From assembly GCA_964106915.2 (NCBI GenBank), contig OZ066922.1: DNA of 64,000 nucleotides. The stretch is one strand, 5' to 3'. Source of the stretch: Podarcis gaigeae (Eukaryota). The notes beneath the pieces are model-generated. The model was not told the DNA's origin. It did not search any database and saw nothing but the letters and a program-made list of their open reading frames with translations. Numbering within the stretch: the stretch's first letter is position 1; every line of letters starts with the position of its first letter. Shown piece by piece: positions 22,343 to 64,000 of this stretch. The translations under genes were made by a program, and so were the position numbers.

Positions 22343-22590
22343 TCCAGGTCGCGTGGCCAGCGTGACAAACTGCATCTGGCGAGCCAGGGCGGCACACGGA
22401 AACGCCGTTTACCTTCCCGCTAGTAAGCGGTCCCTATTTATCTACTTGCACCCGGGGGTGCTTTCGAACTGCTATGTTGGCAGGCGCTGGGACCGAGCAA
22501 CAGAAGCGCACCCCGCTGCGGGGATTCGAACTGCTGACCTGACGATTGGCAGGTCCTAGGCGCTGAGGTTTTACCCACAGCGCCACCCGC
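22343..22590 (-). mobile_element. Sauria SINE, truncated at both ends, abutting the left edge of the duplication homology
   Basis: Same body as full copies at 29846 and 43020 (GTTTACCTTCCCGC, TATTTATCTACTTGCAC, GGGATTCGAAC); lacks the first few 5' bases and the 3' tail. Confidence 0.85.
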
Positions 22591-23382: not shown

Positions 23383-23704
23383 CAGGCTCGTGCTCGCCCG
23401 GGTTGTCGGAGAGCTCGATGACCAGCAGCTCCCGGCCCTCGGAGCTGCGGCCCACGGTGTAGATCCTGCTGATGGACGAGCACTGCAGCCACACCGAGAC
23501 CATCGCCTCGCGCATCTCCGGGTAGCGGTGGTACTCGAAGGAGATGCCGTCCTCCTGGCTGAGGCGGCGACGCCGGTTCGCCGAGCCGCCGCCTGCCGCT
23601 TCGGGCTGCTCCGCCTCGGAGCCCTGCTGCCGCAAGGCGAAGGCGCCCAGCGCGCCGCAGAGCGCCGCCAGCAGCAGCGCCCAGAGCCCACCTCGCCGCG
23701 CCAT
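23383..23704 (-). CDS. CPE: Carboxypeptidase E, coding exon 1 (copy 1, presumably linked to the rest of CPE left of the window)
   Basis: [20 protein letters not shown] signal peptide, RRRR propeptide site, then [28 protein letters not shown]...[19 protein letters not shown] as in vertebrate CPE; 322 nt, phase-1 donor G|GTAAGG. Confidence 0.96.
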
Positions 23705-31187: not shown

Positions 31188-32963
31188 ATGATGGACTAGT
31201 TGTTCATCATGACAACCTTCAGACTTCTCAGATGTCAGAGCCTGACTTACACAGGGCTATTTGAGGCGTGCAAGGCATAACCAAGCTGTTAGAAACCACA
31301 CACTCCAGTCTACAAGCAGGCAGTATTGCTTGTGTTGTAGTTAGAAGTGGTTTTTTTTTTAAGGAGATGTAGCTAAATGCATGCTTTCAGCCACACGTTG
31401 TTGGTTTTCCATGACCACTAGTATTTATTCCAACATGCAGTAGCATTTAGCGGTTTAATATATCTGGACTGTAACGAGGCAGAGGATCACACACCCATCC
31501 TAATTTCAGACTGGAACTAATGATTTTCAGGTTTTACAGACTCAGCTTTTACTGGCATCCATGACTCAGATGGAATGAAGCCATCACTTATGCTAAGTGG
31601 TGCCACTACTTATTTCACAAACAGCAGGATTCTACGGGGCAGGTAGGAGATGTACAGCCCCGTGGCATTCACAGCCTCCACAACAGATCAGCTGCTTGAA
31701 GCAGTTACCAGACTTCTACCTGCCACAAGAGCAAATCATCTTCTGGAACATGAGGTACACCAGACTTTTCTGAACCTTTAGATTTAAGCTCCCTAAAACA
31801 TACTTTCCTGCTAGTACCACTCCTGTAGAGAGAAACTGCTCGTTGTAATTTGGATTAACCATAAATTGTAATTTTCCAAGTTTAAATTTTGACATTGACA
31901 CATGTCTGTGTTTTATTTTCCTGTTGACATTCCAAACATTATTTTTCTCTTGTTTTACCTGTGTGTGTGTGTTTTTTTAAAGATTACGATCATTAAATCA
32001 GAAGTGGCCAACCTGCCTACTGTTATCATACAGCCCTCAGCATCGGATTCTTCTGTGCCTTCTTTCCATTCTCTGTGGCAGACCCCTGTTCATTGTCATG
32101 ACTCCCTCCTCCCCTGAATTCTCCAACCACTGTGGCCTGCTGAGAAGGAGGGTGTGGCTGCTTTTTCCTTCTGGGCAAAGGATTAAGAAGACTGCCTAAG
32201 GCCATGGCAGGGGAGGGGCAGAATTATTTTCACCAGAACCTTGCTCAATGTTCATTCACTGTCTCTTATTGTTACTCCGTGGGAGGTAATTAATCTGAAG
32301 AGTCATACCTTATTATGTTGCAATGCAACAACACATTGCTGTGGGGTGTGTTCCTGTTCACTGTTCCTGTCAGACAACCATACCCTCTTCCTCCAAAGTC
32401 CACTCCATTCCAGTCTTCTCACTTACCCAGGCAGTCAACAGTGCATGGCCTCTTAGCATGCTCTGTCCTCATCTAGCTGTTTTGCCAGTTCCAATATATT
32501 TTGCTGCCTGAGGCAAAGAACAAGATGGCACTCTATCCAACCCACTTCCACCTAAAGGAAATTGGACTGGCAGCTGAATCTTACTTTTGCACTTACAGGG
32601 TAGTGCCCTTTAGTGCTCACTTAGCGGGTGCGTGAGAGGCTTGTAGCCCACCTATAGCTCTGATTTCCAACAGAGTGGAATGTCCAGGGGGCCAGATGGA
32701 ATGGCTGGTGGGCTACCACTGTCACTTGAGCCAATTGCCTCACTCTGCCCAATGGTGGGGTGAATGCTATCAACGGCTTAAATGCATCTCTATACCTTTT
32801 AAAAAATGCATGCAAAATTTGTTTCCTTTGTCTTTTAAGCACCCAGGAACATCGTCAGTTTGAAGTTTGCACTAGAACCTCATTTCCCTGGCTGTACATA
32901 GTTTGCGGGAAACAGGGATGTATATAGGAGCTAGGCATATTAATGATGACCTTTGCATGGGGC

Positions 32964-37659: not shown

Positions 37660-37867
37660 TTATTTGGTCTTCTTTTCCACCATGCACTCTTGTTTCTCCA
37701 ATTTCTCTCTGTAAGAATTGTACTGCGAGTCGGTACCAAACAGTTTATCCCACCATGTGAAGGTTGAAGCATAGTTGCCAATGAAGTTCATATGGTGAAA
37801 GTCATGGAATCGAGCCCCAGCATAGAAAGGCAGCAAATGCAATGGATTCAGAGGAATGTCGTAGCCG
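37660..37867 (-). CDS. MSMO1: Methylsterol monooxygenase 1, copy 1, last coding exon (exon 6)
   Basis: [46 protein letters not shown]...KKTK*; His box HDFHH, KKXX ER-retrieval motif, AG acceptor at 37868-37869. Confidence 0.97.
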
Positions 37868-38271
37868 CTAAGGAGAGCGAGAGAGGAGAATTTACAATGC
37901 AGGTACGGAAGACATTGCTCGCATTTCCATTCAAGTGAAGCATTGCTAAAATCAGAAGCAAGTCCCACAGAGTTTAATGGGGCTTACTCTCTTGTAGGTG
38001 GGTATAGGACTACAACCATAGACATTTACGTTTCCATATTAACTTGGTTGAAAAACCCCTGAAGTTCCTGGACTATTCAACTGGACAACATACTTCTGAA
38101 GCTGTAGAAGTAACATCCGCCATGTGGTATTTAAAATGTGTTTCTTACTTCTGTACTGATGATACATGCTTTATATATAGTCCCTGCAAGGAAGTCATGT
38201 AAATATCTCAGCACAAAGTGTCCACAACACGATGCCAAACAGAGGAATGAAATAGTTGAAAAATGTGGGCG

Positions 38272-38297
38272 CTCTCTCTCTCTCTCTCTCTCTCACA

Positions 38298-38343
<46 letters not shown>
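38272..38343. repeat. (CT)n(CA)n compound microsatellite
   Basis: Direct reading; paralogue at about 58465-58550. Confidence 0.9.
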
Positions 38344-38347
<4 letters not shown>

Positions 38348-39203
38348 CTGGATACATAGCTAGATTTTGCTGGGAAAGTATTCAATGAATCAAGGGTGGC
38401 CAACCTATGGCTCTCCAAATGTTGTTCCCATCAACTAAAAATTATGGTTAAATGTTCTCTGTGGGAAAATGATTGCAACTCGACAGTTCTCTCTAACCAT
38501 AATTTGTTTCACTTGTTCAGACATCACAAGGAATTCTAGTTAGCTTAACATTAAAAAGCTTTCTATCTGAAATAAATAAATGAATGAATGAATGAATGAA
38601 TGAATGAATGAATGAATTCATTTATAGCCTTCCCATCTGGCTGTGTTGCCCCAGCCACTCTGTATCTATCTTTGACATGTGAAAATAGAGGGGAAGAGGG
38701 AGCATGTGAGCCTAAGGCTCATTTAGGTAGCATAGTTTCCAGTTGCATCTTATCATTTCTAGTTACATCTTAATCATACTTAATAGAGCAGCTTTTATGT
38801 GGAACTTAAGGTGACCCTACTTGCTCAAAGAGTATGAAATTAGTTTGTAAGCTTGTCATCTAAAGAATCATGTGCAGTAGAATCCTCTGAATGTTTATGC
38901 AAGCTCTACTAAAGTCACTGAAACTTACTCTAAGGTAGGAATGCACAGGATTTCAGTCTTAAATACATGCACTTTGAATAAGGACATTTAGAGGAAATCC
39001 CGAATAGTTAATAGATTTTTTTTTTAAAAAAAAGTCATTTGTCTAGATTTTACCTGGTGACTTTGGGTGGGATTCAACGAAGTGTGACTTAGAGTACACC
39101 TAGATGACTAATTTAGATCTAATACCCCAAGTAACACGTTTTTGAATACAACCCTCTATATTTCTGATGAATATGACCAGACTGAACAGCGAAAGTAGAT
39201 TAC

Positions 39204-39358
39204 CTGTGGACGTCAATGGTCTCCAGCAAGCGACAGATCACCCATGCCCACAGAAGAATCACGTGATTGCAAAACACCATTATTCCAATGAAAAACCCAG
39301 CTCCAAGGATAAGGGTTTCCAGAGGGTGTGCATATTCAGCTTGCATTCCAAACGGAGC
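39204..39358 (-). CDS. MSMO1: MSMO1 copy 1, exon 5
   Basis: [25 protein letters not shown]...[10 protein letters not shown]; 155 nt, AG/GT boundaries. Confidence 0.96.
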
Positions 39359-39440
39359 CTATGAAAGGAGGAAGAGGGGAGAAAATGCTCTTTTGTAGGC
39401 TAAGACATAAATATACTTTACGGCTAATCTGAAATGTATA

Positions 39441-39647
39441 CAGTGGGTTACGAACTAAATTTGTTCCGGAGGTCCGTTCTTAATCTGAAACCGTTCTTAA
39501 CCTGAGGTACCACTTTAACTAATGGGGCCTCCTGCCGCTGCTGCACGGTTTCTGTTCTCATCCTGAGGTATAGTTTTTAAACCGAGGTACTACTTCCGGG
39601 TTAGCGGAGTCTGTAACCCGAAGTGTTTGTAACCCGAGATACGACAG
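39441..39647. mobile_element. Decayed Tc1/mariner MITE shared by both copies
   Basis: Same internal sequence as the 28680 family, degenerate TIRs, TA flanks; paralogue 59622-59828. Confidence 0.8.
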
Positions 39648-40561
39648 TACGTCCTGCATGGCCAGGTTGTTCTAGCAGAGTTCTCCCCCTCTCGCACTCA
39701 GATCCTGGTTTTAATGTTACATACAGGTAACAGAGGAATGAGTGAACTGTGTTTAGCTCTACTCCAACTCTTTATGACTACAAATTCTGGACTGCCCCTG
39801 AGACACTATAATTTCAGCTGGTAGCATAGAACCATGATTACTTAAGACGACAGAATAAGAACCCCCTGTAAAATATTCAGAATGGAAGCAAATCATAGCT
39901 TATATGAAAACTTTACAGTGATGCTTTCCTCACCTTCAGATCCCCCTGAAGGTTTTTCTGAGTCTTTAGTCTATGCTCCCTACTGAGCGTTATTTCAGTA
40001 ATAGAAGCTAGCTATTCAAAAAAGCAATTGGAGGGTGGTTGTTAGGGAAATCAACCAATCTAGGGTGAAACCTTACAGGTGGGCTTTAGCTCAGTTGTAC
40101 AGCACAGTGATGCAGAAGGACTAAGGTTCAGTCACTGGTCTCTCTGTTTAATAGGACCTCAGTAAGTAAGGAGACTGGAGAATTGCTGCTGGTCAGACTT
40201 CACTACAAATATACTAGGTCAAAGTGGGTTATGTTCCTAACCTACATGATCATTATCAGAATTGTAGGGGAAACCAGCTGAAGGGATTTTTGTATTTTAT
40301 AGCCAGTCATTGGTGGGTAAGATGTTAGACATATTCAGAGCACAGCATTTAAAATGGCGAACTATTTTGAGCGATCAGTTTCGAAGTCTGTCCAACTACA
40401 GCAATATTAAACTCTTGATGAAAACAGTTTGCTAAGCGTGCTGTTTTCTCTTCTCCCTTTTTACAAAAAGAATAGCTAATGTATGCCTAGTGCTTTTATA
40501 TGCTCACAGCATTACAGCATTAACTAGGTAACGTTCACCAAGAATTTAAGGCAATACATAC

Positions 40562-40688
40562 CACAAACTCATGATGCACTTTGTGGATATACTTATATAT
40601 TCTCTTGTGATGCAGCAGCCTATGCAGAAAATAATGCCAGGCATCCTCAATCACAGCACATCCAAAACATTGAGAAAGTAGCACATAC
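40562..40688 (-). CDS. MSMO1: MSMO1 copy 1, exon 4
   Basis: [42 protein letters not shown]; His boxes; 127 nt, AG/GT boundaries. Confidence 0.96.
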
Positions 40689-41076
40689 CTGGGGGGGGGG
40701 GGGTAGGGAAAGAGAAGCATTTGTTAAGACAAGTACAATAGATTAGGACACCTTGTCTCCCAACCCAATTTTTGCTTTATACAAATCATTGTAGCAGTTT
40801 TCTAAAACTAATTTCACATAAAATTTACTTAATCCATTAACATCTTTCTTTCTTGCAAATCAGTTGTAATTTGTAATGATAAGAACGCTTTATAGGGAAA
40901 GTTCAGCTTGAAAATGACTGACAACTAGAAACTTATTACTATTTTTCTGTGCAGAACTTTTAGAAATCTTCCATATGCTGAAGTGCAGTGCTTGATCATA
41001 ACAGGATTTGAGAAACACTGCATTTACTGAAGTACTTAACTGCACAGAGCTCTTTAAGTGAAATCCATCTACTTAC

Positions 41077-41225
41077 CATCTTGGCATGCTTTCCCAGTCA
41101 TAAGGAATATTAAAATATTCTGTGAAGTAAAAGGTACCAAGTATCAGAGGAAACTGAATAAAAAAGTGATTGAACATAAGTGCCTTGAAACACTTCCATT
41201 GTCTTTCCCAGGTTTCTGGCTTATC
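41077..41225 (-). CDS. MSMO1: MSMO1 copy 1, exon 3
   Basis: [50 protein letters not shown]; 149 nt, AG/GT boundaries. Confidence 0.96.
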
Positions 41226-43635: not shown

Positions 43636-43890
43636 CTGTTGTATTTTATACTTTTGCATGTAAGGTATAAACTGAAAGATAAATCCAGGCAAACATATTA
43701 AAAAGTAGGAAAGTTCATGCATGAGAAGTGATCCCCAGGTTGCAATCTGGTATTTGGTGTAGTTATTCAGCATATATGTCCAAGCATTTTTAAATGGCTG
43801 TTGTAGCGGATTCTCAGGCAAGAAAGAGTCTATATATTCTACCGCCAGGTAAGCAGAATTCAGTATGCCAACACTCTCGTTAGTTGCCAT
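43636..43890 (-). CDS. MSMO1: MSMO1 copy 1, first coding exon (exon 2; exon probably starts at 43934)
   Basis: [37 protein letters not shown]...YKIQQ; 255 nt, donor CAG|GTAAG; the five exons sum to 894 nt (297 aa plus stop). Confidence 0.97.
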
Positions 43891-44337
43891 CGTTCAGTTC
43901 TGGAACATCACACCTGTAGCTTCTCTGCGGGATTCTAGGAACAGTAAATAGACATCATGGTAAAGATACCATAACCAAAATGACATCGGCCAGAAACAGT
44001 GTGCAGCTGTTGACTTGCATAAAAATAGTAGGGGACAAGGTCTATCCCTTTCCATACTAGACAACAGAGTTAAACAGATGTCGCTACTTGCCCTTTGTCC
44101 TTGTCCGGTAGGAGAAGAGATTAATTCATACCTGCTTGCGCTGTATACATTGACAGAATCTTCTCTACCGCCTGACAAGAAGGAAATATGCTGCTGCTTA
44201 ATTAGGATGCCTTGGCCATAAACTGATTGATCATGCTAGTTATCTGTTACATAATAAAAAGTAAATTGAAAGCCCTGCATGAAACTACCAGGATTTACCT
44301 TGAGAGAACATCCAAGGATTAACTAAAAAAACGATTA

Positions 44338-44578
44338 CAGTGGTACCTCATGTTACGTACCGTCCCCCTTACGAATGCTGCGGGTTACGCGCTCCACTAA
44401 CCCGGAAGTAAATCCCCCTTGTGTGACCCTTGCCCCTGGATGCAAGCGGAAGTCGCACTCTGGCGAAGTGGCAGCAGCAGAAGGTACCATTAGGGAAAGT
44501 ATGCCTCATGCTACGAGCGGTTTCGGGTTACAAATGGACCTCTGGAACGGATTAAGTATGCAACACAAGGTACCACTG
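44338..44578. mobile_element. Tc1/mariner MITE, divergent subfamily
   Basis: TIR CAGTGGTACCT ... AGGTACCACTG, TA TSD. Confidence 0.85.
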
Positions 44579-44737
44579 TATCATCTTTCCCTTCCTGATA
44601 TGAACAAAGGACAGGTGCCAATGTTTACATACCGATTTCAGTCCAAACCAATTCTTACCTATGTGGCATTCCTAATGCATCAGATTGAACAAAGTTTTTA
44701 CAAGCATTCAATATTGGAGGTATAAGATCAAATTACA

Positions 44738-44981
44738 TGCTTCCGGGTCATGTAGCCAGCATGACTAAGCAGCTTCTGGCAAACCAGAGCAGCGTTTACC
44801 TTCCCGCTGGAGCAGTACCTATTTATCTACTTGCACTTTGACATGCTTTCAAACTGTTAGGTTAGCAGGAGCAGGGACTGAGCATCGGGAGCTCACCCAG
44901 TCATGGGGATTCGAACCACCGACCTTCTGATTGGCATGTCCTAGGCTCTGTGGTTTAACCCACAGCGCCACCCACATCCCT
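44738..44981 (-). mobile_element. Sauria SINE, 3'-truncated
   Basis: Head and body match other copies; CAAGCATTCA repeated at 44701 and 44982 may be the TSD. Confidence 0.85.
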
Positions 44982-45650
44982 CAAGCATTCACATACATGT
45001 GTCAAATGTATATGCATAAGTTTGCTTAACCTGATGCAGTAAAGTAACTCTTAATAAAGAGGAATTAAATGCTGTATTCTTCTAATTATTCAGTCAGAGC
45101 AAGAATTTAGGCTTGCCAGATGGAACAATCCTGACCCTCCAGAGTGGCCAATGGTCAAAGATGACAGGAGTTGTAGTCCAACAACATTTAGAGAGCCAGA
45201 GGCTAGCCATCCCCAATATGTGTGAAAATCAACTAACATTAAGAGTGCCACAACAACAGAATCCCAATCCCACCTTGGCAATCAAACTGAGTGATTGCAG
45301 GCTAAGGTACCTGACCAGGGGGGTGAAATCCTTATAATGGCTACTCTGCCTTTCTGTACCTCAAGCCTTACTTTGTTATGCACTTGATATTCAGGTGAAT
45401 CTATTTGGAGAAAGTTTATACCCCCCTCTTTGTCCAGCCAGGTACCAGACCAGACCGGCAAGTTACTAAAATCTGAAATGATTGAGGTCTATTATTTATT
45501 TATTGCACACTTTTTTTTAACATAAAAAGTAAACTCAAAGTGAATTGCAATGTATCAAATAACTTACCCAATCTATCTGCTATAATTATGCACATTTCAA
45601 CCTCCTAACAGTATCAGTAATCTATTCTTCTACCCATATTACAAGTTAAA

Positions 45651-46030
45651 GGGAGCAGGTGGTGTTGTGGTCTAAACCACTGAGCCTCTTGGGCTTGCCA
45701 ATTGGAAGGTCGGTGGTTTAAATCCCCGCCACAGGGTGAGCTCCCATTGCTCTGTCCCAGCTTCTGCCAACACAGCAGTTCAAAAGCATGCCAGTGCAAG
45801 TAGATAAATAGGTACTGTGTGACAACAAGGTAAACGGCATTTCTGTGAGCTCTGGTTTCTGTCACGGTGTTCCATTGCACCAGAAGCAGTTTAGTTATGC
45901 TGGCCATATGACCCAGAAAAGCTGTTTGTGGTCAAACGCCGATTCCCTCGGCTTGAAGCAAGATGAGTGCCAAAACCCCATAGTCACCTTTGACTGGACT
46001 TAACTGTCCAGGGGCCCTTTACCTTTTTGT
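45651..46030 (+). mobile_element. Sauria SINE, older subfamily
   Basis: Head, body and CCTTTA tail; 14-bp TSD TATTACAAGTTAAA. Confidence 0.88.
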
Positions 46031-47008
46031 TATTACAAGTTAAAAGAGATAAGACATCTCTGCCTGCAAGTTTGCTTTCCAACAGCGCAACTCAATAGAG
46101 AAAAGTAATGGGGAGGCATGAAAAGCAAGCACTGGAGCAGCTATTCCTTTACTGGCAGACTGAGGGGGCCAGGCTGGTCTTCCTCTTGGTCTTCCTAGTA
46201 GCCCTGTGTACCCCTGCTGGTGACTGAGGCCACAGCATGCCACCCATTGGTTTCCTGTACAACGCAAGACTATGACTGAAACTAGATACATCCTAGCTCT
46301 GTGAAGCAAGACTTAAGCATGCAAAATGATGAAACCTTATAGCACAATCTCAAGGATGTTTACTTCGCAGCACATTTATCAAATTAAACTGGGCTAATGT
46401 TGTAGGATACAGTGCCTCAAGCATCAGACTAGGCCAGCTCCCTGCTCAGCCACAAAGTACATTTGATGTTCTTGGTCTAGTCATTGTATTTTACTTATTA
46501 TACCATAAATTTTCTATACTGCTTAATTATAGGTGGGAACGACTAAAGTGGTTTCCCACTATCCATCCTAACCCACCTATCCCAAAGTTTGGTTAGGAAC
46601 AAGTTGCAGGAGGAGAATGCCTACAGCTCCTTGGAGAAGATCCGGTAAATAATAATGATGTTACATTCTTAAAACATGCTACCTCATCTGTCTTAAAGTT
46701 ACATAAAAACTAGACAGTCCATCTGTCAGGCTTGGCCAAGCTCATCAACCACAACAAACAAACAAATAATATAAACTTTAGAATTATCAAGCCATGGTTT
46801 GCTTTCTTGTTCTACCAGTTAAGCAGTGTAATAGGAATTTTATGGTCTTAGATATAGGGTAATGTTAATAAGTGTACCAACCAAGCACATACATAGATCA
46901 GTACAGGAAGGCCAACCTGGAACCATTTTGATTCCTAAACTGACCAAATCCTTTCTCTGCAAGGTCAAACTGGAAAAGCCTCCCCATTCTCTCTTTCCTC
47001 ACAAATCC

Positions 47009-47457
47009 TGTCGTAAGAATATGTCTGTTTGAATAGGGTGTGAGCCTGTGACCTGGCCAGGAACTAAGTATTTATCAGTACAAAAGACTGGCCAGGCTAC
47101 CCAGGCAATCCAGTCAAGTAACCTGCTAGACAGGAGATAAACAACAGGAGAAAAAAAAATATTAAAATTTCTGTGATGTAGGTGGGATGTATCTGAGGGG
47201 TGGTCTTGATCTACAGGATGGGAATTTCAAAAGTCTTTATAAGGCCTTGCATGCCATTTTTCTGCGTCCTCCTCCTTTCCTGCGTGTGAGGGGAGCACCC
47301 TGTTGCAACAAAGATCAGGCTTACTAGCTGCTTTGCTTCTCAATATTCTCTGGTTGGCCACTGTTATTTTCTCCTACCAATAGGGAACCTATGTAAGGAC
47401 TCTATATGGGCTCTTGGATACCCCATAAGGGAAAAGGGCAATTTTTTATTTACAACA
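47009..47457 (+). mobile_element. Probable solo LTR in MSMO1 intron 1
   Basis: TGTCGTAA ... TTACAACA inverted termini (TG...CA), about 450 bp, internal TATA-like TTTATAA at about 47236; no TSD found. Confidence 0.5.
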
Positions 47458-47828
47458 GAAGCACTAGGCGAACCAAAACACCGAAAATCGAAAACAGGTA
47501 CCAGGAGAAAGAAATGCCTTCTGCTATAACTCACCTGGGCCAAATAACAACAACAATTACAAAATAAAAATGCATCTCCCGAACCCTTAACTTCATCTTT
47601 TGTCTCTGAGAGAGAAGTCGGTGAGGGGGGAGAGAAATAAAACGGAAAGTCACAAAATAACAGGCCTGAGCGGCCAAGAAGTGAATATTTTGGTGCCCAT
47701 AAACAAAATGTAAAGGGGTTGCGTTTGTCGCCTTTTTCGGGTAGGGGGATCTCCAAATGCAACCAATGAAAGGAGCACCCCCTAAAACAACCCGCCCCCC
47801 AAGGCGCCTCCGCTCTCCATCCTCTTAC

Positions 47829-47900
47829 CTGCGCCGAGGGATGCAGCAGCTCTGCCCACCGACGCTCCGCGACAAGGGCCAGGCTCCTTTTGCGCCGGGT
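47829..47900 (-). other. MSMO1: MSMO1 copy 1 non-coding exon 1 (start approximate)
   Basis: Consensus donor GCAG|GTAAGA at 47827-47829 in a CpG-rich segment just downstream of CCAAT boxes. Confidence 0.7.
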
Positions 47901-48120
47901 CCTCAAATACGTCTTCTTCATTGGCCTAGCAGGTCTCGGCGGGCTCCCATTGGGTGGAGGGATGGAGTGAGATCGTCAGACCTTGTGGGCCGGCCAATGG
48001 GACGAGGCGCTAGTTCACTGACGAAGAGAAGGGAGAGGAGCGAGATGGGTGGAAGGAGGGGACGCGGGGCGGAAGGTAGCCATGGAAATCGCACGGTGGC
48101 TGCACGCTCACCTGCCTCTC
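47900..48120 (-). promoter_or_regulatory. MSMO1: MSMO1 promoter with NF-Y (CCAAT) boxes and an SRE-like element
   Basis: ATTGG at 47920-47924 and 47949-47953, CCAAT at 47994-47998, ATGGAGTGA (TCACTCCAT) at 47962-47970, GC box GGGGCGG at about 48066; typical SREBP/NF-Y/Sp1 layout of sterol-synthesis genes. Confidence 0.75.
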
Positions 48121-48472
48121 CTAATATCGAAGGATCGAAGCCTCTGCTCACGGGGTTTACTTCCAAGGAAAGCTGGGCATAAAACGGCAGCTTTCTGATG
48201 CAGCTTATCTCCCCCGCCTCACGCTCCAAAATAAACCTAGAAATAATGTTTGGTATTGTTTTCGGTTCATACAACTCCCCCTTCCTTTTGCTGGAGAAAA
48301 ATTCAGATTATTTTTTTAATGGTACATGCGGAATCGCTTTCACGTTTCCCCTTTTTTTAAACTGCCCATTTCATTGCTGTAACCCAGCCTGGGACCTTAT
48401 GGTAGGGAGCAATTATAAATGATAAATAAATGTGAAAATCCCGAATCCCATAGGTGGTTTGGTTCCTCTTGG

Positions 48473-48749
48473 CAGTGCCAGATTTATGTACAAGCTAAAC
48501 AAGCTACAGCTTAAGGCCTCACTCTCTTGGGGGCCCCCAAAAGAATTAAAGGAAAAAACACCTGGATGTACATTTCCAAAATATATAAAAAACAAATAAA
48601 ATTTAACCTACATACAGCAAGAGTGTTTTGTGTTGTGTAAGCTCCTATGATGTAAGTAATGGGCTTCGCCTGCTCCCTAAAGTATCACATATAAAGGGCC
48701 CTATTACCTTATGTAGCTTAGGGCCTCATCAAACCTAAATCTGGCCCTG
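48473..48749 (+). mobile_element. Non-autonomous hAT element
   Basis: TIRs CAGTGCCAGATTTA / TAAATCTGGCCCTG, perfect 8-bp TSD CCTCTTGG. Confidence 0.92.
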
Positions 48750-49398
48750 CCTCTTGGGGCTTGGTGCTAAGTACTGGCAAGTGCTTCAGATTGCAGCCGT
48801 TCTTGTTCTTGTTCAACAAGAACAGCAAACACAAGTTTGATTACCTTATTCTACTGCTATCTTCCACATGCAAACAGTGAGGCCAGCAACTGGCATCTAT
48901 ATATTTATTAAAAGTTACAGCCTGCCCTTCATTATTGCCAGGTTTGGCTGTGATGTAACAAATTGCAATCTTAAAAATCAATTTATAAAACACACTGTCG
49001 GGCTGAGAACTAAAAACAGACGGGTGAAACACTCATTAAAACCCACAAAAGTCAGTAAAAAAAGTCTTCTCACCAAGTGTTTGTCCCTTATATAGTTGTA
49101 GGGAGAAAGCACTCCACAAACAAGGATGCCATGCTGGGGAAGTTTGTACCACCACTTAATTAGTCTCTAACAGATAACATAAAAAGATTCCCTCTGCTGA
49201 TCTTGGAACACAGATAGGTTCAGTATTTCATGTATTTGAGTCACAAGCTCTCAGAGAAGGTGCAGTGTTTTAGATATTTGAGTCTCAAGCTATTTAAGTG
49301 TAGAAAGGTGCACAGCCATTTAAGGCTATAAAGCTGCAGCCTTGACTTAGGCTGGGAAATGAATAGATGGCCAATGCAGTTGTCTAAATGTTGATGTA

Positions 49399-49610
49399 CA
49401 GTGGTACCTCGGGTTACATACGCTTCAGGTGACAGACTCCACTAACCCAGAAATATTACCTCAGGTTAAGAACTTTGCTTCAGGGTGAGAACAGAAATCA
49501 CGCGACGGCGCAGCAGCAGCGGGAGGCCCCATTAGCTAAAGTGGTGCTTCAGGTTAAGAACGGACTTCCGGAACAAATTACCGTTAAGTACTTCACCAGA
49601 GGTACCACTG
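49399..49610. mobile_element. Tc1/mariner MITE
   Basis: TIR CAGTGGTACCTC ... GAGGTACCACTG, TA TSD. Confidence 0.9.
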
Positions 49611-50525
49611 TACTATGATTCATATTGGTTGTATAAGTCAAAACTCTGGCAGCCACATTTTGCACTCATTGACATAAACTAGACAGACCACTGCTACTTT
49701 TAATCCTCCCTGCCAGAAATGTGTCCCAAGCGTATTGTCACTGAAGGGTTAACACCATCCCATCCTCCCTTAACTGCCTACACCACAGCATAGAATAATG
49801 CAGTTCAGTGATGTGGTAAACAGCTCAGAGGTATTTCACTTGAGAAACCAGTTTGACAGTGACAGAATGCTTCTTGATTTTAAAAGGAAAGAACACACTC
49901 ATTTGGAGTGCTCTTAAGGGACTAGCCTTTTCTCTGACATCTAGTTTTCTCTGAAGGGTGGGCCTGCACGTGGATAAGGAGAAACATTCAAACATGAGCT
50001 TGTAAGTGGTACAGCCCAGACACAGTTTACCTCCCTCTAAGAATCAGTAATAGACACCAAAGGCGAATGGAAAAGTTTTCATTCACACGGTAGCTCATCA
50101 TATACTTCTATTGCTATATCAATGAGAATTACTACGAGATTCACCTAAAACAAAAACTGGGTTCCTGTTTATTGTGCCTGTTGCCCCATGTGTTGATTCA
50201 TGCAGCTTTGATATTTGCAGGGATCTCTGTCTTCAACAACTAATAGGATGCTGACCTGCTCTGATATTTATTTTTACTGCTGCTGCTAGTGAGAGCTCCT
50301 GGGCCATTCCATCTGCTTGCCCACTCTGTTCCTAGATGCCAACCAGCCAGCACTTCATTGCTGATTCTAGGAGGAGGATAGTAAAAACATCTATGGCTAT
50401 CTGGCTTGCTGCCACACTACAGTGCAAACCTTTTGGAGTTTGCATGAGGGCACCAACCTCTTTGAGTTTGTGCTGTGGAATGTATTATCCAAGTAATGTA
50501 ATCCAAGTGATGTAATATTGGGTAG

Positions 50526-50692
50526 CAGGACTGGCCCACCCATGAGGCAAGGTGAGGTCACTGCCTCAGGTGGCAGGACCCATAGGGTAGCAAATTCGGA
50601 TGCAGATCTTTACTCCCCACTTCTTCCTTTGTGGGGAGGGAGGTGCCTTTTGTGGTTTGCCCCAGGCACCAAAATGTCTTGAGCCAGCCTTA
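50526..50692. mobile_element. hAT-like MITE
   Basis: Degenerate TIRs CAGGACTGGCCC / GAGCCAGCCTTA, 8-bp TSD TTGGGTAG. Confidence 0.55.
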
Positions 50693-52053
50693 TTGGGTAG
50701 TTTTTGCTGTCCGAAGTGAGAATCTGAGTTGTAATGCTTTTGTTCATTTCAAAGTTGTTCAGTACCACTCAGTGTGAGACACTGAACCGGTATAGATTAC
50801 AACCCTATGAGGGTGGGAGTCTAGATGGGAGTAGTTTTGTTGCTGGTTATATGACACTACATTGCCCTAGAATGAATGAGCTGGTCTCCCTCCTGTCTCA
50901 AGGCACCCACAGGCTACTGGAAGATGGGAGACAAAGGTTAATATTTCAATGGGTATGGTTGTCGCTAAAAAAGTAAATATATTGAAGTGACAGGAGGATG
51001 TCACAATTCTGTCATTTTGTTCCACTTTGTGAATTGTTTTGACAGAAAAACAGGCTACAAATCACTAAGCAAATAAATAACTTTTTGTGTGAACCTATTT
51101 CCTTACCAGCCAGACTGTATGGTAAATATTGTTGGCCACTGTGTGCCACCATGGAACCTGGCAACACCAGCATGGGTATTATTTGACCGATTCATGTATT
51201 CAGAGAAATTTTAGCTACTACTGTTACTGCATCAAGCAGCTGTTGTGGAGAAGTATTTCTCTGAATAGGAGGAACTGTGTCACACTTTTAACATTGTGTG
51301 TGTGTACGCGTGTGTGAAGAGAGAGACAGAAGGAGATGGAGCTGGTCTCTTCCAAGTCATGGTACATATACGGTTTTCTTTCCATCAATGGCTACTGGCT
51401 CTTTAAAGACTAAAGACAGAGGCCTTCCTATGCAACCTGACATGTGGCTGATACCTTGATCTATAAGAGGGATGGGAAACCTGTGGCTCTCTAGGTGTAG
51501 TTAAGACTACACCTAGCATGGCCAGTGGTGGAAGATTATGGGAGGGCCAGCTTCAATGGCATCTGGAGATTCAAGTCTATAAGAAACCATCTCACCAAAT
51601 GGCTCTCTACCTGCTTCTCTTCCCCCTCCAATAAGGCTGGCACAGATGAATCCTTTCCTCAACTAATTCCCTTAAACCAGGAAGGTTTCAGCTGCCCATC
51701 CAAAGTCATTCCACGGTGAAATACGTCGCACGTGGCCTCTGCCATGACACAAGCAGCTCAGCCAGCCCACTAAGCCGAGTCGAAATCATGGCTCCGAAGG
51801 TGTAGGCAGAGATCCTCAAAGCCTGGTTACCAGGAAAGATTATCATTATCACCATAGCATCCCTTGCATGCGTCTCCAGGTCCGCGCACGCGATGACCTC
51901 AATGCTGAGAAACAAGGCAGGAATTTGCAAGGGAGAGAGAGGTTGTTTATTCCACCTGAGAAAGCAAAGGAAAAAATGGGGGCGGTGGGGTGGAGGAAAG
52001 AGGAGACACCCAGGACACCCCCAACCCAGCACTGCGTCAGGGGCTTCCCTTAC

Positions 52054-52375
52054 CAGGCTCGTGCTCGCCCGGGTTGTCGGAGAGCTCGATGACCAGCAGC
52101 TCCCGGCCCTCGGAGCTGCGGCCCACGGTGTAGATCCTGCTGATGGACGAGCACTGCAGCCACACCGAGACCATCGCCTCGCGCATCTCCGGGTAGCGGT
52201 GGTACTCGAAGGAGATGCCGTCCTCCTGGCTGAGGCGGCGACGCCGGTTCGCCGAGCCGCCGCCTGCCGCTTCGGGCTGCTCCGCCTCGGAGCCCTGCTG
52301 CCGCAAGGCGAAGGCGCCCAGCGCGCCGCAGAGCGCCGCCAGCAGCAGCGCCCAGAGCCCACCTCGCCGCGCCAT
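52054..52375 (-). CDS. CPE: Orphan duplicate of CPE coding exon 1 (intact ORF and donor; MSMO1 copy 1 lies between it and any further CPE exon)
   Basis: No nucleotide difference seen versus 23383-23704; only about 600 bp of intron 1 homology follows; expression unknown. Confidence 0.85.
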
Positions 52376-52730
52376 GCCTGACGGAGAAGAAGGACGGGCG
52401 AGCGAGCGAGCGAGCGCGGCTGGCAATGCGCGCTTCTGCCTCTGCTTCTTCGCTCAGCTGCTGCCTTGACGTGCTGCGTCGACGCGGGCTGCGCTCCCTC
52501 TGCGCCCGCCTCCCCCTCCCGCAGGCGGAGAAACCTGCTCCGTCCAGGAAGAGCGCTCGCGCCGCAGCCTGCACTACTCGCGCCGCAGCCGCCGGGGGGA
52601 GACGCAAGGATGTACCACTGCCGCGCGCGGGGGATGCGAAGGTGTGACGTGCCGCCACGCGCGCGCGCGCGCGCCGCCCTGTCCACCTGGCAGCGCACAG
52701 GCGCCGCGATTGGCCAGGTGCGGGAGGGTG
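52376..52730 (-). promoter_or_regulatory. CPE: Duplicated CPE CpG-island promoter / 5' UTR
   Basis: Near-identical to 23705-24110, CpGs retained, about 53 bp shorter. Confidence 0.75.
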
Positions 52731-54145: not shown

Positions 54146-54182
<37 letters not shown>

Positions 54183-55432: not shown

Positions 55433-55439
55433 AGTTAGT

Positions 55440-57848: not shown

Positions 57849-58056
57849 TTATTTGGTCTTCTTTTCCACCATGCACTCTTGTTTCTCCAATTTCTCTCTG
57901 TAAGAATTGTACTGCGAGTCGGTACCAAACAGTTTATCCCACCACGTGAAGGTTGAAGCATAGTTGCCAATGAAGTTCATATGGTGGAAGTCATGGAATC
58001 GAGCCCCAGCATAGAAAGGCACCAAATGCAATGGATTCAGAGGAATGTCGTAGCCG
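57849..58056 (-). CDS. MSMO1: MSMO1 copy 2, exon 6
   Basis: 208 nt, intact, LHLVPF versus LHLLPF in copy 1. Confidence 0.96.
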
Positions 58057-58484
58057 CTAAGGAGAGCGAGAGAGAGAGGAGAATTTACAATACAGATACG
58101 GAAGACATTGCTCGCATTTCCATTCAAGTGAAGCATTGCTAAAATCAGAAGCAAGTCCCACAGAGTTTAATGGGGCTTACTCTCTTGTAAGCGGGTATAG
58201 GACTACAACCATAGACATTTACCAGTTTCCATATTAACTTGGTTGTAATACCCCTGAAGTTCCTGGACTATGCAACTGGACAACATACTTCTGAAGCTGT
58301 AAAAGTAGCATCCGCCATGTGGTATTTAAAATGTGTTTCTTACTTCTGTACTGATGATACATGCTTTATATATAGTCCCTGCAAGGAGGTCATGTAAATA
58401 TCTCAGCACAAAGTGTCCACAACACTATGCCAAACAGAGGAATGAAATAGTTGAAAAATGTGGGCTCTCTCTCTCTCTCCCACA

Positions 58485-58552
<68 letters not shown>

Positions 58553-59384
58553 CTGGATACATAGCTAGACTTTGCTGGGAAAGTATTCAATGAATCAAGG
58601 GTGGCCAACCTATGGCTCTCCAAATGTTGTTCCCATCAACTAAAAATTATGGTTAAATGTTCTCTCTAACCATAATTTGTTTCACTTGTTCAGACATCAC
58701 AAGGAATTCTAGTTAGCTTAACATTAAAAAGCTTTCTATCTGAAATAAATAAATAAATAAATATAAATTCATTCATTCATTCATTCATTCATTCATTCAT
58801 TCATTCATTTATAGCCTTCCCATCTGGCTGTGTTGCCCCAGCCACTCTGTATCTATCTTTGACATGTGAAAATAGAGGGGAAGAGGGAGCATGTGAGCCT
58901 AAGGCTCATTTAGGTAGCATAGTTTCCAGTTGCATCTTATCATTTCTAGTTACATCTTAATCATACTTAATAGAGCAGCTTTTATGTGGAACTTAAGGTG
59001 ACCCTACTTGCTCAAAGAGTATCAAATTAGTTTGTAAGCTTGTCATCTAAAGAATCATGTGCAGTAGAATCCTCTGAATGTTTATGCAAACTCTGCTAAA
59101 GTCACTGAAACTTACTCTAAGGTAGGAATGCACAGGATTTCAGTCTTAAATACATGCACTTAGAATAAGGACATTTAGAGGAAATCCCGAATAGTTAATA
59201 GATTTTTTTTTTAAGTCATTTGTCTAGATTTTACCTGGTGACTTTGGGTGGGATTCAACGAAGTGTGACTTAGAGTACACCTAGATGACTAATTTAGGTC
59301 TAATACCCCAAGTAACACGTTTTTGAATACAACCCTCTATATTTCTGATGAATATGACCAGACTGAACAGCGAAAGTAGATTAC

Positions 59385-59539
59385 CTGTGGACGTCAATGG
59401 TCTCCAGCAAGCGACAGATCACCCATGCCCACAGAAGAATCACGTGATTGCAAAACACCATTATTCCAATGAAAAACCCAGCTCCAAGGATAAGGGTTTC
59501 CAGAGGGTGTGCATATTCAGCTTGCATTCCAAACGGAGC
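59385..59539 (-). CDS. MSMO1: MSMO1 copy 2, exon 5
   Basis: 155 nt, same as copy 1, splice sites intact. Confidence 0.96.
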
Positions 59540-60735
59540 CTATGAAAGGAGGAAGAGGGGAGAAAATGCTCTTTTGTATGCCAAGACATAAATATACTTT
59601 ACGGCTAATCTGAAATGTATACAGTGGGTTACGAACTAAATTTGTTCCGGAGGTCCGTTCTTAATCTGAAACCGTTCTTAACCTGAGGTACCACTTTAAC
59701 TAATGGGGCCTCCTGCCGCTGCTGCACGGTTTCTGTTCTCATCCTGAGGTATAGTTTTTAACCCGAGGTACTACTTCTGGGTTAGCGGAGTCTGTAACCT
59801 GAAGTGTTTGTAACCCGTGATACGACAGTACGTATCTGCATGGCCAGGTTGTTCTAGCAGAGTTCGCCCCCTCTCGCACTCAGATCCTGGTTTTAATGTT
59901 ACATACAGGTAACAGAGGAATGAGTGAACTGTGTTTAGCTCTACTCCAACTCTTTATGACTACAAATTCTGGACTGCCCCTGAGACAGTATAATTTCAGC
60001 TGGTAGCATAGAACCATGATCACTTAAGACGACAGAGTAAGAACCCCCTGTAAAATATTCAGAATGGAAGCAAATCATAGCTTATATGAAAACTTTACAG
60101 TGATGCTTTCCTCACCTTCAGATCCCCCTGAAGGTTTTTCTGAGTCTTTAGTCTATGCTCCCTACTGAGTGTTATTTCAGTAATAGAAGCTAGCTATTCA
60201 AAAAAGCAATTGGAGGATGGTTGTTAGGGGAACCACCCAATGTAGGTTACAGGTGGGCTTTAGCTCAGTTGTACAGCACAGTGATACAGAAGGACTAAAG
60301 TTCAGTCACTGGTCTCTCTGTTTAATAGGACCTCAGTAAGTAAGGAGACTGGAGAATTGCTGCTGGTCAGACTTCACTACAAATATACTAGGTCAAAGTG
60401 GGTTATGTTCCTAACCTACATGATCATTATCAGAATTGTAGGGGAAACCACCTGAAGGGATTTTTGTATTTTATAGCCAGTCATTGGTGGGTAAGATGTT
60501 AGACATATTCAGAGCACAGCATTTAAATTGGCGAACTATTTTGAGCGATCAGTTTCGAAGTCTGTCCAACTACAGCAATATTAAACTCTTGATGAAAACA
60601 GTTTGCTAAGCGTGCTGTTTTCTCTTCTCCCTTTTTACAAAAAGAATAGCTAATGTATGCCTAGTGCTTTTATATGCTCACAGCATTACAGCATTAACTA
60701 GGTAACGTTCACCAAGAATTTAAGGCAATACATAC

Positions 60736-60862
60736 CACAAACTCATGATGCACTTTGTGGATGTACTTATATATTCTCTTGTGATGCAGCAGCCTATGCA
60801 GAAAATAATGCCAGGCATCCTCAATCACAGCACACCCAAAACATTGAGAAAGTAGCACATAC
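60736..60862 (-). CDS. MSMO1: MSMO1 copy 2, exon 4
   Basis: 127 nt, two synonymous differences from copy 1. Confidence 0.96.
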
Positions 60863-61251
60863 CTGGGGGGGGGGGGGTAGGGAAAGAGAAGCATTTGTTA
60901 AGACAAGTACAATAGATTAGGACACCTTGTCTCCCAACCCAATTTTTGCTTTTTACAAATCATTGTAGCAGTTTTCTAAAACTAATTTCACATTAAAATT
61001 TACTTAATCCATTAACATTTTTCTTTCTTGCAAATCAGTTGTAATTTGTAATGATAAGAACGCTTTATAGGGAAAGTTCAGCTTGAAAATGACTGACAAC
61101 TAGAAACTTCTTGTTATTGTTCTGTGCAGAACTTTTAGAAATCTTCCATATGCTGAAGTGCAGTGCTTGATCATAACAGGATTTGAGAAACACTGCATTT
61201 ACTGAAGTACTTAACTGCACAGAGCTCTTTAAGTGAAATCCATCTACTTAC

Positions 61252-61400
61252 CATCTTGGCATGCTTTCCCAGTCATAAGGAATATTAAAATATTCTGTGA
61301 AGTAAAAGGTACCAAGTATCAGAGGAAACTGAATAAAAAAGTGATTGAACATAAGTGCCTTGAAACACTTCCATTGTCTTTCCCAGGTTTCTGGCTTATC
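61252..61400 (-). CDS. MSMO1: MSMO1 copy 2, exon 3
   Basis: 149 nt, same as copy 1, splice sites intact. Confidence 0.96.
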
Positions 61401-62213
61401 CTGTAAACAAGAAATAAAAGTATTTTATAAATATAAGTAGAATATTCCAATGATATTACTGAAGATGTGATACATGGGAATAAGTACTAAATGAATAGTA
61501 CTTCATACTATAATAGAAGAATACCTAAATTAAAGGTAACGGAATATCAGCTTTGTCTTATCTGACACTGTTTCAACTGATAATGCCCCAAAATGCAGCA
61601 ACACTGCTGCCTGTGATTATCAATGTTTCCATTAATATCAGATATACATTTCAATGTTGATTCCCTGCCAATTATCATGCTACTCCAGGTGTACTTGGGG
61701 TAAGGCGAGAGATAAATATTAAGGTAGTGTTAGAATGCTCAGATTTTTGTCTTTCAGCCCGGGAACAGTACTGCCATTTGGTCTGAATTTATTGTTAATG
61801 AATCAAGATTACAAATGCTATTTTCAAGTCAAAAGGAAGCAGTTATGGTATGCATAGATCACAGCATCTATGGCATCAGAGCAGGGATGAGTAACTTGTG
61901 ACCTTCCAAACATTGTTGAACTCCAGATTCTGTCAGCCCCAGCCGGCATAGCCCATGGTCAGGAATGAGCGGAGCTCATATATCTGGAGGGCCACAGGTT
62001 TCCCCACCCCTGAATTAGTTTGGAGCCTGTACATTGTTTCAAGAAGGCTGCAGAAAATCAGCACAGTAAAGTAATCATGGTTTTATAACAGACTGGGCTC
62101 ATTATCTCATTAGGAAGCAGGATACTATGATCTATCCACCTTTTAGTAGAAACTGGATTGAGAAGGCACCAGAATTCTATACGATACAAGTTTCACTGAC
62201 TTATTATTCAATA

Positions 62214-62559
62214 CAGTGGTACCTCGGGTTACAAAAATCATGCAGCGACGGCACGGGAGGCCCCATTAGCTAAAGTGGTTTTCAGGTTAAGAACGGACCT
62301 CCGAATTAAGTTCTTAACCCGAGTACCACTGTACAGTGGTACCTCAGGTTACATACGCTTCAGGTTACAGACTCTGCTAACGCAGAAATAGTACCTTGGG
62401 TTAAGAACTTTGCTTCAGGATTAGAACAGAAATCGTGCTCCGGCAGCGCAGCAGCAGCAGGAGGCCCCATTAGCTAAAGTGGTGCTTCAGGTTAAGAACA
62501 GTTTCAGGTTAAGAACGGACCTCCAGAACAAATTAAGTACTTAACCCGAGGTACCACTG
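62214..62559. mobile_element. Tandem pair of Tc1/mariner MITEs (62214-62331 copy-2 specific; 62334-62559 shared)
   Basis: TA-[CAGTGG...CCACTG]-TA-[CAGTGG...CCACTG]-TA. Confidence 0.9.
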
Positions 62560-63567
62560 TATTGCAATATTCCAAGCTTTATGTTATTACATATATACCA
62601 TTCATGTATCAGGGTGTATGTCACTCAAGCGAATTTCACACACGGTTACTATTAAAAACAAGAGTGCCCAGGGCTGATGCTATATACAGGGGCCATGGTC
62701 TAGCTTAGTGATGGATAGCCTGAAGCTTTGCAGACTGCTCCAACTCCCATCAGCCCCTGCCAGCATTGCCAATGGTCAGAGATGACAGGACAGTTTGGGG
62801 GACCACTGGTTCCCACCTGTGTTCTAGCCACTCTACAGCTTCTGTGGGGGAAACTAGCAACTGTACAATGTTATCTCCTTTCTTCATTTACTGGCTGAAC
62901 AATGCAATCCTATGCATTGCTTAAGACAGAATCCTACACCAACTAATCTGTGAGTAAGCCACAGTGACAATCACATCTGAGCAACTGTCACTGTGGCTTA
63001 CTCACAGGTAAGTCTGTGTAGCGTTCCAGCTTAAATACATCTTTAACATTACCTCTTGTCCTTTGGGGTAGCGTGCAGGATAACAGTAAACATCTAGCAA
63101 TTAAACCTTTTCAGACGTTCCACTTTCTACAATAACATATCAAAACATACACAAACACCCTATTTACTTGAAAGCCTGCAAGTTAGAGGCCAGACTGTCA
63201 AAGGCCCTTTGCCTCGTGCTTTTCAACAGTACCACCCAGAATTCAGATTGGAAGTCAGCAATACGTACTCACAGTTAGCGAAACTAAATATCTATATAAG
63301 AAATTAACCAAAATATGCATAATAATTATACAATCACATAAATAAGTGTAAATTGTTCCGTGTTTGTTATAAAAGCAGAGTAAAGCATAAGATCGGTTTT
63401 TTTCTATCCTCTGAAATAGGCTGCTCACAAAAATGTCACCAGTCGCAAGCTGGCAGAATATGGGAAATGAACTCATGATCTGGGGAGCTCCAAAGTTATG
63501 CCACTTGTTGGAGCCATGTATGACACCAGAGCTGGAATTTTTCATACTAGACAACACTCCATCTTAC

Positions 63568-63822
63568 CTGTTGTATTTTATACTTTTGCATGTAAGGTAT
63601 AAACTGAAAGATAAATCCAGGCAAACATATTAAAAAGTAGGAAAGTTCATGCATGAGAAGTGATCCCCAGGTTGCAATCTGGTATTTGGTGTAGTTATTC
63701 AGCATATATGTCCAAGCATTTTTAAATGGCTGTTGTAGCGGATTCTCAGGCAAGAAAGAGTCTATATATTCTACAGCCAGGTAAGCAGAATTCAGCATGC
63801 CAACACTGTCGTTAGTTGCCAT
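63568..63822 (-). CDS. MSMO1: MSMO1 copy 2, first coding exon (exon 2; exon probably starts at 63866)
   Basis: [14 protein letters not shown]...YKIQQ, 255 nt, donor intact; its exon 1 and promoter would lie beyond the window. Confidence 0.96.
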
Positions 63823-64000
63823 CGTTCAGTTCTGGAACATCACACCTGTAGCTTCTCTGCAGGATTCTAGGAACAGTAAATAGACATCATGGTAAAGACA
63901 CCATAACCAAAATGACATCGGCCAGCAACACAGTGTGCAGCTGTTGACTTGCATAAAAATAGGGGACAAGGTCTATCCCTTTCCATACTAGACAACAGAG

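What the first reader, a model, noticed from the sequence alone, without database searches (positions are those of the whole stretch)
43636..52730. Possible CPE-promoter-driven CPE::MSMO1 chimeric transcription unit created by the duplication
Seen: the orphan CPE promoter and exon 1 (phase-1 donor at 52054) point into MSMO1 copy 1 on the same strand. The next recognisable acceptor is MSMO1 exon 2 (TTCCTAG|, 43934), 44 nt before the ATG, so 1+44=45 nt keeps the frame: ...GEHEP-ESRREATGVMFQN-TGA-ACG-ATG(MSMO1). This predicts a 120-aa protein with the CPE signal peptide, RRRR cleavage site and a new tail containing a dibasic RR, ending 3 nt before the in-frame MSMO1 start. Known: CPE is a neuroendocrine gene whereas MSMO1 is SREBP-controlled. 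Inference: the fusion mRNA could yield a small secreted non-catalytic CPE fragment, sterol-independent MSMO1 by re-initiation or TGA readthrough, or transcriptional interference over the MSMO1 promoter with nonsense-mediated decay of the product.
Basis: partly seen in the sequence, partly recalled or inferred. Interest (0 to 1): 0.88.

Follow-up and report, generated by a model that had tools for sequence, protein, structure and literature searches.

The report
Stray CPE promoter before duplicated MSMO1
In a wall lizard, a probably real tandem duplication left a spare start of a hormone-processing gene (CPE) in front of a cholesterol-pathway gene (MSMO1), but any fused RNA would most likely be destroyed or cut short, and no RNA evidence for it was found.

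Summary
The geometry and arithmetic are right: orphan CPE exon 1 (52375-52054, phase 1) joined to MSMO1 exon 2 (43934) gives 120 aa, stopping 3 nt before the MSMO1 ATG. The duplication is probably real (about 80%): two other animals of the best-matching species carry DNA across the apparent breakpoint and branch exactly where the two copies differ. The true junction lies lower (49303-51446) and was not pinned down.

The functional story is weak. Exon 2 is not the next acceptor: a stronger one (48017) pairs with the MSMO1 exon-1 donor, and three acceptor-plus-AATAAA pairs come earlier. The TGA-NNN-ATG leader is ancestral, so the frame match is chance. The stop lies 258 nt before a junction (decay expected), a 120-codon upstream frame is too long for re-initiation, and the peptide lacks the HxxE zinc motif. 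No RNA run of this species was available, so the chimera is untested.

Closest known case: DMXL2/CYP19A1, where such a fusion is 2-5% of transcripts. Side finding: MSMO1 is repeatedly duplicated in squamates. The scan noted this duplication only on this same stretch.

The parts
52376..52720 (-). Orphan CPE CpG-island promoter and 5' leader (copy B); a 53-nt stretch present in copy A is absent at about 52717
   Evidence: GC 0.72, CpG o/e 1.07 in both copies; core aligns to gecko CPE promoter; alignment of copies. Activity not shown.
52054..52375 (-). Orphan CPE exon 1 coding part (107 codons + 1 nt; signal peptide, RRRR site, start of the M14 domain), donor at 52053
   Evidence: no HxxE zinc motif in it
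51935..52567 (.). 633-nt tract identical in both copies (gene conversion, or constraint plus shared ancestry)
   Evidence: longer than the longest run in 1000 simulations (median 209, max 585)
51447..51934 (-). Start of CPE intron 1 shared with copy A; 16-nt indel between the copies at 51512; homology ends at 51447/22589
   Evidence: contigs of two other animals end at 51513 and another bridges 51447
50048..51512 (.). Segment seen at about half the contig depth of its flanks in both animals of organism A, but not in organism F; 50048-51446 has no counterpart in copy A
   Evidence: pieces 6, 7, 28-30; ratios 0.56, 0.37 versus 0.85. Contig depth is a weak measure.
49303..51446 (.). Interval that holds the true duplication junction (exact place unresolved; candidates: MITE 49397-49617, 50047/50048, or unique DNA above 50204)
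   Evidence: inference
50526..50691 (.). hAT-like MITE with intact 8-bp target-site duplication: its flanks belong together, so it is not the junction
49397..49617 (.). TA-inserting MITE; the one link in the chain that short contigs cannot phase
48904..49009 (-). Candidate cryptic terminal exon: acceptor 49009 then AATAAA 48909 with upstream TGTA (117-aa product); similar pairs at 50366/50272 and 51955/51951
   Evidence: pattern scan only
47829..48017 (-). MSMO1 copy-1 promoter (CCAAT boxes 47953, 47924; SRE-like 47970), non-coding exon 1 ending at donor 47828, and a strong upstream acceptor at 48017 that could turn it into an internal exon (109-aa product)
   Evidence: probable RNA run of a related species has signal in bin 47740-47939
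46825..47460 (.). Insertion private to this assembly in MSMO1 copy-1 intron 1
   Evidence: skipped by contigs of X1 and X11 (table 5c)
43636..43934 (-). MSMO1 copy-1 exon 2 (44-nt leader with in-frame TGA at -6, ATG 43890)
37660..41225 (-). MSMO1 copy-1 exons 3-6 (41225-41077, 40688-40562, 39358-39204, 37867-37660); intact 297-aa frame
57849..63866 (-). MSMO1 copy-2 exons 2-6; intact 297 aa, 3 amino-acid and 5 silent differences from copy 1
31250..32030 (.). Squamate-conserved non-coding block upstream of native CPE, deleted from copy B
   Evidence: matches gecko, python and rattlesnake; no match in copy B
23383..23704 (-). Native CPE exon 1 (copy A), continuing into true intron 1
   Evidence: intron blocks at 11753-11976 and 11007-11247 match the rattlesnake CPE intron
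22343..22590 (-). 3'-truncated Sauria SINE at the point where copy A stops matching copy B; probably marks a deletion in copy A

Best explanation
A real tandem duplication of about 27-29 kb doubled MSMO1 and carried the CPE promoter and exon 1 along as a dead-end passenger (duplication: supported by DNA contigs, junction not pinned). The spare promoter is probably active in CPE-expressing cells (inferred from its intact core). A share of its transcripts runs on into MSMO1 copy 1 and splices to exon 2, directly or through the 48017 acceptor and exon 1 (inferred). Ribosomes then start at the strong CPE ATG and stop after 109-120 codons with several junctions still downstream, so the RNA is degraded and yields at most traces of MSMO1 or of an unfolded CPE stub (from established rules). 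The only likely effect is some dampening of the copy-1 MSMO1 promoter in those cells. If anything is selected, it is MSMO1 dosage.
For: Contigs of two other animals bridge 51447 and both branch at 51512, the A/B indel, and at 50047; the piece between is at about half depth in both, not in organism F. No gap in the window; two of three interrupting repeats have intact target-site duplications. Copy B lost a squamate-conserved block, as a dispensable copy may. Both MSMO1 copies are intact and MSMO1 is duplicated repeatedly in squamates. Stop 258 nt before the next junction. Re-initiation in mammals usually needs upstream frames under 30 codons (PMC5972666); no UGGGA motif. DMXL2/CYP19A1 precedent, 2-5% of transcripts (PMC3272822).
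Against: No RNA from this species. Contig depth is not copy number. Animal S1 shows single sequence versions over 270-670-nt pieces at the higher depth, which two copies 2.5% apart would not give unless homogenised. The junction could not be bridged at the 49397-49617 MITE. Cryptic terminal exons may stop transcripts before MSMO1.
Confidence: 0.45

Rival explanations
1. The duplication is real but no CPE::MSMO1 chimera forms: the orphan transcript splices to a cryptic terminal exon and is polyadenylated before the MSMO1 promoter (49009/48909, 50366/50272 or 51955/51951), or the promoter is weak after losing upstream elements.
For: Three acceptor-plus-AATAAA pairs before MSMO1; copy B lacks the conserved block and 53 nt of promoter; the partial UBE3C duplicate uses a terminal pseudo-exon about 7 kb downstream and escapes decay (PMC9976978).
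Against: Pattern matches only; such sites are common in introns and usually ignored; the 51955/51951 pair is also in native CPE intron 1; the core promoter is identical to the native one.
Confidence: 0.25
2. False duplication: two divergent haplotypes of one locus were placed in tandem, joined near the MITE at 49397-49617, so no orphan promoter exists in the animal.
For: 2.46% divergence is near haplotype-level variation in this genus (1.92% heterozygosity for a P. tiliguerta individual, PMC12511862). The window is identical to animal S1 over 49775-51542 but 2-4% different below 49420, a switch that spans the MITE. S1 shows one version of MSMO1 intron 1.
Against: No gap, and a 220-bp repeat rarely misleads long-read assembly (own knowledge; assembly method not known). 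Both other animals carry A-like and B-like paths at 51512; a single-locus reading needs both to be heterozygous and a third deletion allele that rejoins at 50047, which copy A does not contain. Loss of the conserved block from a common allele is unlikely.
Confidence: 0.2
3. One reading: a functional chimeric unit that makes sterol-independent MSMO1 in neuroendocrine cells by re-initiation or read-through, or a stable secreted 120-aa CPE fragment.
For: Frame arithmetic holds; promoter and exon 1 are kept identical over 633 nt; even a 2-5% DMXL2/CYP19A1 chimera accompanies a phenotype (PMC3272822).
Against: Upstream frame four times the usual limit, 3-nt spacer, no UGGGA motif, TGA-A stop context, no ATG-free cryptic leader evident; leader is ancestral, not remodelled; no protein with this tail among the 120 listed short CPE relatives (a weak blank); peptide has no HxxE zinc motif.
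Confidence: 0.1

Closest known systems
DMXL2/CYP19A1 chimera of aromatase excess syndrome (PMC3272822)
   Same: A rearrangement places a neighbour's promoter and ATG-bearing exon 1 before a steroid/sterol enzyme gene whose start codon is in exon 2; the upstream frame ends early (47 aa), decay is predicted, chimera is 2-5% of transcripts.
   Different: Human, made by deletion, chimera shown by RT-PCR. Here a tandem duplication in a lizard, 120-aa signal-peptide frame, both parent genes intact, nothing shown at RNA level.
UBE3C intergenic fusion (PMC9976978)
   Same: 5' partial gene duplicate transcribed from its own promoter into foreign DNA.
   Different: Ten exons, ends in a terminal pseudo-exon, stable and disease-causing; here one exon, end point unknown.
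Chimeras at tandem-duplication junctions (CYP11B1/CYP11B2, CHRFAM7A; from my own knowledge, not tested)
   Same: A duplication junction joins the 5' part of one gene to the body of another.
   Different: Those give continuous reading frames or an ATG-free leader; here an in-frame stop separates the two frames.
Tandem MSMO1 copies in snakes and Hemicordylus (database gene models)
   Same: Extra intact MSMO1 copies on the same chromosome, in the rattlesnake directly upstream of CPE; same-species copies mostly group together in the tree.
   Different: The two rattlesnake units sampled contain no CPE exon 1 within 10 kb; they are older and more diverged.

Membership tests
Rearrangement-born promoter-capture chimera (DMXL2/CYP19A1 type) | A real genomic rearrangement puts a foreign promoter and exon 1 upstream on the same strand | tested here: inconclusive
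   Same-strand geometry seen; other animals support both paths but the junction was not bridged; about 80% real
Rearrangement-born promoter-capture chimera (DMXL2/CYP19A1 type) | Intact promoter and splice donor; usable acceptor before the recipient's start codon | tested here: met
   (sequence only)
Rearrangement-born promoter-capture chimera (DMXL2/CYP19A1 type) | Chimeric spliced RNA exists | not testable with these tools
Rearrangement-born promoter-capture chimera (DMXL2/CYP19A1 type) | Recipient protein made under the captured promoter | not testable with these tools
   Sequence argues against more than traces
In-frame fusion gene | One open frame across the junction | tested here: not met
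   TGA two codons before the MSMO1 ATG; all six AGs near the exon-2 start give 112-120 aa
Termination-reinitiation (short upstream frame or TURBS type) | Upstream frame under about 30 codons, or UGGGA motif before the stop-restart site | tested here: not met
   120 codons; no UGGGA in the last 120 nt
Active M14 carboxypeptidase | HxxE zinc-binding motif and catalytic domain | tested here: not met
   Only profile positions 2-43 of 286; no HxxE; HGNE lies after exon 1 in gecko CPE
False (haplotypic) duplication | Gap or unsupported join between copies | tested here: inconclusive
   No N; 51447 bridged, two repeats cleared by target-site duplications, MITE 49397-49617 unphased
False (haplotypic) duplication | Divergence at the level of alleles and half read depth over both copies in the source animal | tested here: inconclusive
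   2.46% versus 1.92% heterozygosity in a congener; reads of the source animal were not among the runs laid

The most novel reading that the evidence does not exclude
A duplication widespread in a wall-lizard species keeps a CPE promoter, held identical to the native one by gene conversion, in front of one MSMO1 copy, and this gives that copy a neuroendocrine-specific control (extra enzyme independent of sterols, or a tissue-specific brake on the extra dose), as one solution within repeated MSMO1 amplification across squamates.
Probability: 0.1. Interest if true: 0.7.

Novelty: new member of a known kind. Interest (0 to 1): 0.3.

Why it matters
If the strong form were true it would be a natural, apparently tolerated case of promoter capture that rewires a sterol enzyme in neuroendocrine cells, a type known mostly from human disease. 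On present evidence it is an ordinary partial-gene passenger of a duplication. The more promising lead is the repeated duplication of MSMO1 in lizards and snakes, which I did not find described (limited library) and which could bear on skin or gland sterols.

Tried and rejected
Junction at 51447: rejected, since contigs of two animals run across it and copy A has a truncated SINE there. Junction at the repeats 50526-50691 or 48473-48749: rejected by intact target-site duplications. KLHL2 last exon between the genes: no matching frame and no match to the turtle 3' region, and no signal in the probable RNA run at 48940-49339 or 49740-50339 (weak). Short CPE proteins with the predicted tail: none among 120 listed. 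Lacertid orthologous loci could not be fetched: exact look-ups found nothing and the last homologue search returned nothing at the strict cut-off I set. Rfam: no match. Bacterial promoter scan is irrelevant here. Paper searches found no report of MSMO1 duplication in lizards or of a CPE-MSMO1 fusion.
Full report
Setting. The window is from a lacertid, by all signs a wall lizard (Podarcis): Sauria SINEs throughout, and a partial P. muralis MSMO1 model matches exon 3 at 98%. Names in the read tools are coded, so the species is not fixed. Self-comparison shows a direct repeat: copy A 22589-44069+ and copy B 51447-64000+. Over 11.3 kb of aligned bases they differ by 2.46% substitutions and by about ten large private indels, mostly transposons. 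On the minus strand the order is MSMO1 copy 2, orphan CPE promoter and exon 1, an unmatched 3.5-kb stretch, MSMO1 copy 1, native CPE. Both MSMO1 copies are intact, 297 aa, with three amino-acid and five silent differences. Native CPE continues into a true intron 1 with blocks conserved in rattlesnake.

Checking the observation. Exon 1 has 322 coding nt (phase 1), the exon-2 acceptor is at 43934 with a 44-nt leader, and the joined frame is 120 aa ending three bases before the MSMO1 ATG. Two parts of the observation do not hold. First, exon 2 is not the next recognisable acceptor: a simple scan gives 26 earlier candidates, among them 48017 (16 of 17 pyrimidines against 13 for exon 2), which lies 189 nt before the MSMO1 exon-1 donor and would give a 109-aa product, and three acceptor-plus-AATAAA pairs (51955/51951, 50366/50272, 49009/48909) that could act as terminal exons. 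These are pattern matches, not evidence of use. Second, the frame match is not special: TGA-NNN-ATG stands before the MSMO1 start in turtle, python and rattlesnake as well, and any leader length has a one-in-three chance of this phase.

Is the duplication real? Homology between the copies stops at 51447/22589, exactly where copy A carries a 3'-truncated SINE, which suggests a later deletion in copy A, not the junction. In two animals of the best-matching species, from different studies, contigs run across 51447 (50541-51542 with no difference; 50985-51542 with three), end at 51513, which is the 16-nt A/B indel, and end at 50047. The pieces between 50018 and 51542 have 0.56 and 0.37 of the depth of the flanking pieces, against 0.85 in a related species. 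The simplest graph is a loop: sequence on both sides is present twice and this piece once. A single-locus reading needs both animals to be heterozygous and a third allele that rejoins at 50047, which copy A does not contain. Two of the three repeats that interrupt the contig chain have intact 8-bp target-site duplications, so their flanks belong together. Copy B has also lost a non-coding block conserved in gecko, python and rattlesnake, as expected of a dispensable copy.

Doubts remain. The tool warns that contig depth is not copy number. Neither animal appears to be the source of the assembly. Animal S1 shows single versions over 270-670-nt pieces at the higher depth, so its copies would have to be nearly identical, unlike the window's. 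The window equals S1 over 49775-51542 yet differs by 2-4% below 49420, and that switch spans a 220-bp MITE (49397-49617) that short contigs cannot phase. A congener individual has 1.92% heterozygosity (PMC12511862), close to the divergence of the copies. The related species has a contig across 50047, so the junction is there only if that species shares it; both window copies share M57 where P. muralis and outgroups mostly have V, which favours a later origin or homogenisation. I put the duplication at about 80% real, with the junction somewhere in 49303-51446. A recombinant or phase switch between two haplotypes that each carry a young duplication would fit all of these data.

How it most likely works. 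Shown: intact CpG island, core promoter, strong start context and donor, identical to native CPE over 633 nt, longer than any run in 1000 simulations, which suggests gene conversion; in S2 the neighbouring piece differs from copy B at seven sites, the same number as copy A does, though I could not check them site by site. Inferred: the promoter fires in CPE-expressing cells and some transcripts pass about 4 kb and at least four AATAAA to reach MSMO1. From established rules: the stop lies 258 nt before the exon 2/3 junction with three more junctions downstream, well beyond the 50-55-nt rule for decay (rule from my own knowledge). Re-initiation in mammals usually follows upstream frames under 30 codons, or needs a UGGGA element near the stop (PMC5972666); here there are 120 codons, a 3-nt spacer and no such motif. 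TGA-A is not a leaky stop context (own knowledge). No ATG-free leader is evident, as the 5' leader has only weak cryptic donors. The peptide covers 42 of 286 positions of the M14 profile and lacks the HxxE zinc motif, so it is probably unfolded and degraded (inference). No listed short CPE relative has the predicted tail, a weak blank. RNA could not be tested: no RNA run of the species was offered; a probable RNA run of a related species only supports MSMO1 exon 1 near 47829-47900.

Comparison. It works like the DMXL2/CYP19A1 chimera, where an ATG-bearing foreign exon 1 is spliced to a recipient exon 2, decay is predicted and the chimera is 2-5% of transcripts (PMC3272822), or like the UBE3C partial duplicate that ends in a cryptic terminal exon (PMC9976978). 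Membership is not established because the RNA is not shown. It is not an in-frame fusion gene and does not meet the criteria for termination-reinitiation.

Verdict. A correctly described arrangement, probably real, of a known kind, with the interesting outcomes unlikely (about 10%) and untested. The better lead is that MSMO1 has been duplicated several times in squamates: eight consecutive accession numbers in Crotalus adamanteus (KAK9399096-103, seven of them seen here as MSMO1 models) come just before CPE, there are multiple copies in C. tigris, Pituophis, Erythrolamprus and Hemicordylus, and same-species copies mostly group together. Interest 0.3.

Noticed in passing
L001, L002, L007 (Crotalus adamanteus CM077924.1, 70.46-70.89 Mb) and proteins P0265, P0363-P0379, P0412, P0418: MSMO1 is present in several tandem copies in snakes and twice in Hemicordylus; the tree suggests independent duplications. 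No paper found on it.
   Followed up: partly
window 31250-32030: Non-coding block conserved in gecko, python and rattlesnake between MSMO1 and CPE; also present downstream of a rattlesnake MSMO1 repeat unit; deleted in copy B. Possible enhancer.
   Followed up: partly
window 11753-11976 and 11007-11247: Two blocks in CPE intron 1 about 80% identical to rattlesnake, with no open frame; candidate regulatory elements.
   Followed up: partly
window 51935-52567 versus 23264-23896: 633-nt identical tract over the CPE promoter, exon 1 and intron start; other animals suggest the homogenised stretch differs in extent between individuals.
   Followed up: partly
window 51955-51946 (also in copy A): Strong acceptor 98 nt after the CPE exon-1 donor, immediately followed by AATAAA; a possible short intronic-polyadenylation isoform of native CPE too.
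   Followed up: no
window 47665-47534: Acceptors at 47665 and 47605 with a perfect donor at 47534 in MSMO1 intron 1: possible alternative non-coding exon.
   Followed up: no
window 46140-49420: MSMO1 copy-1 5' region differs by 2-4% from both animals of the best-matching species, often at sites where they agree with a more distant species; deep polymorphism or introgression.
   Followed up: partly
window 25597-28155 and 4203-5582: Long open frames of LINE-type retrotransposons (853 and 460 codons stop to stop); the first is private to copy A.
   Followed up: no
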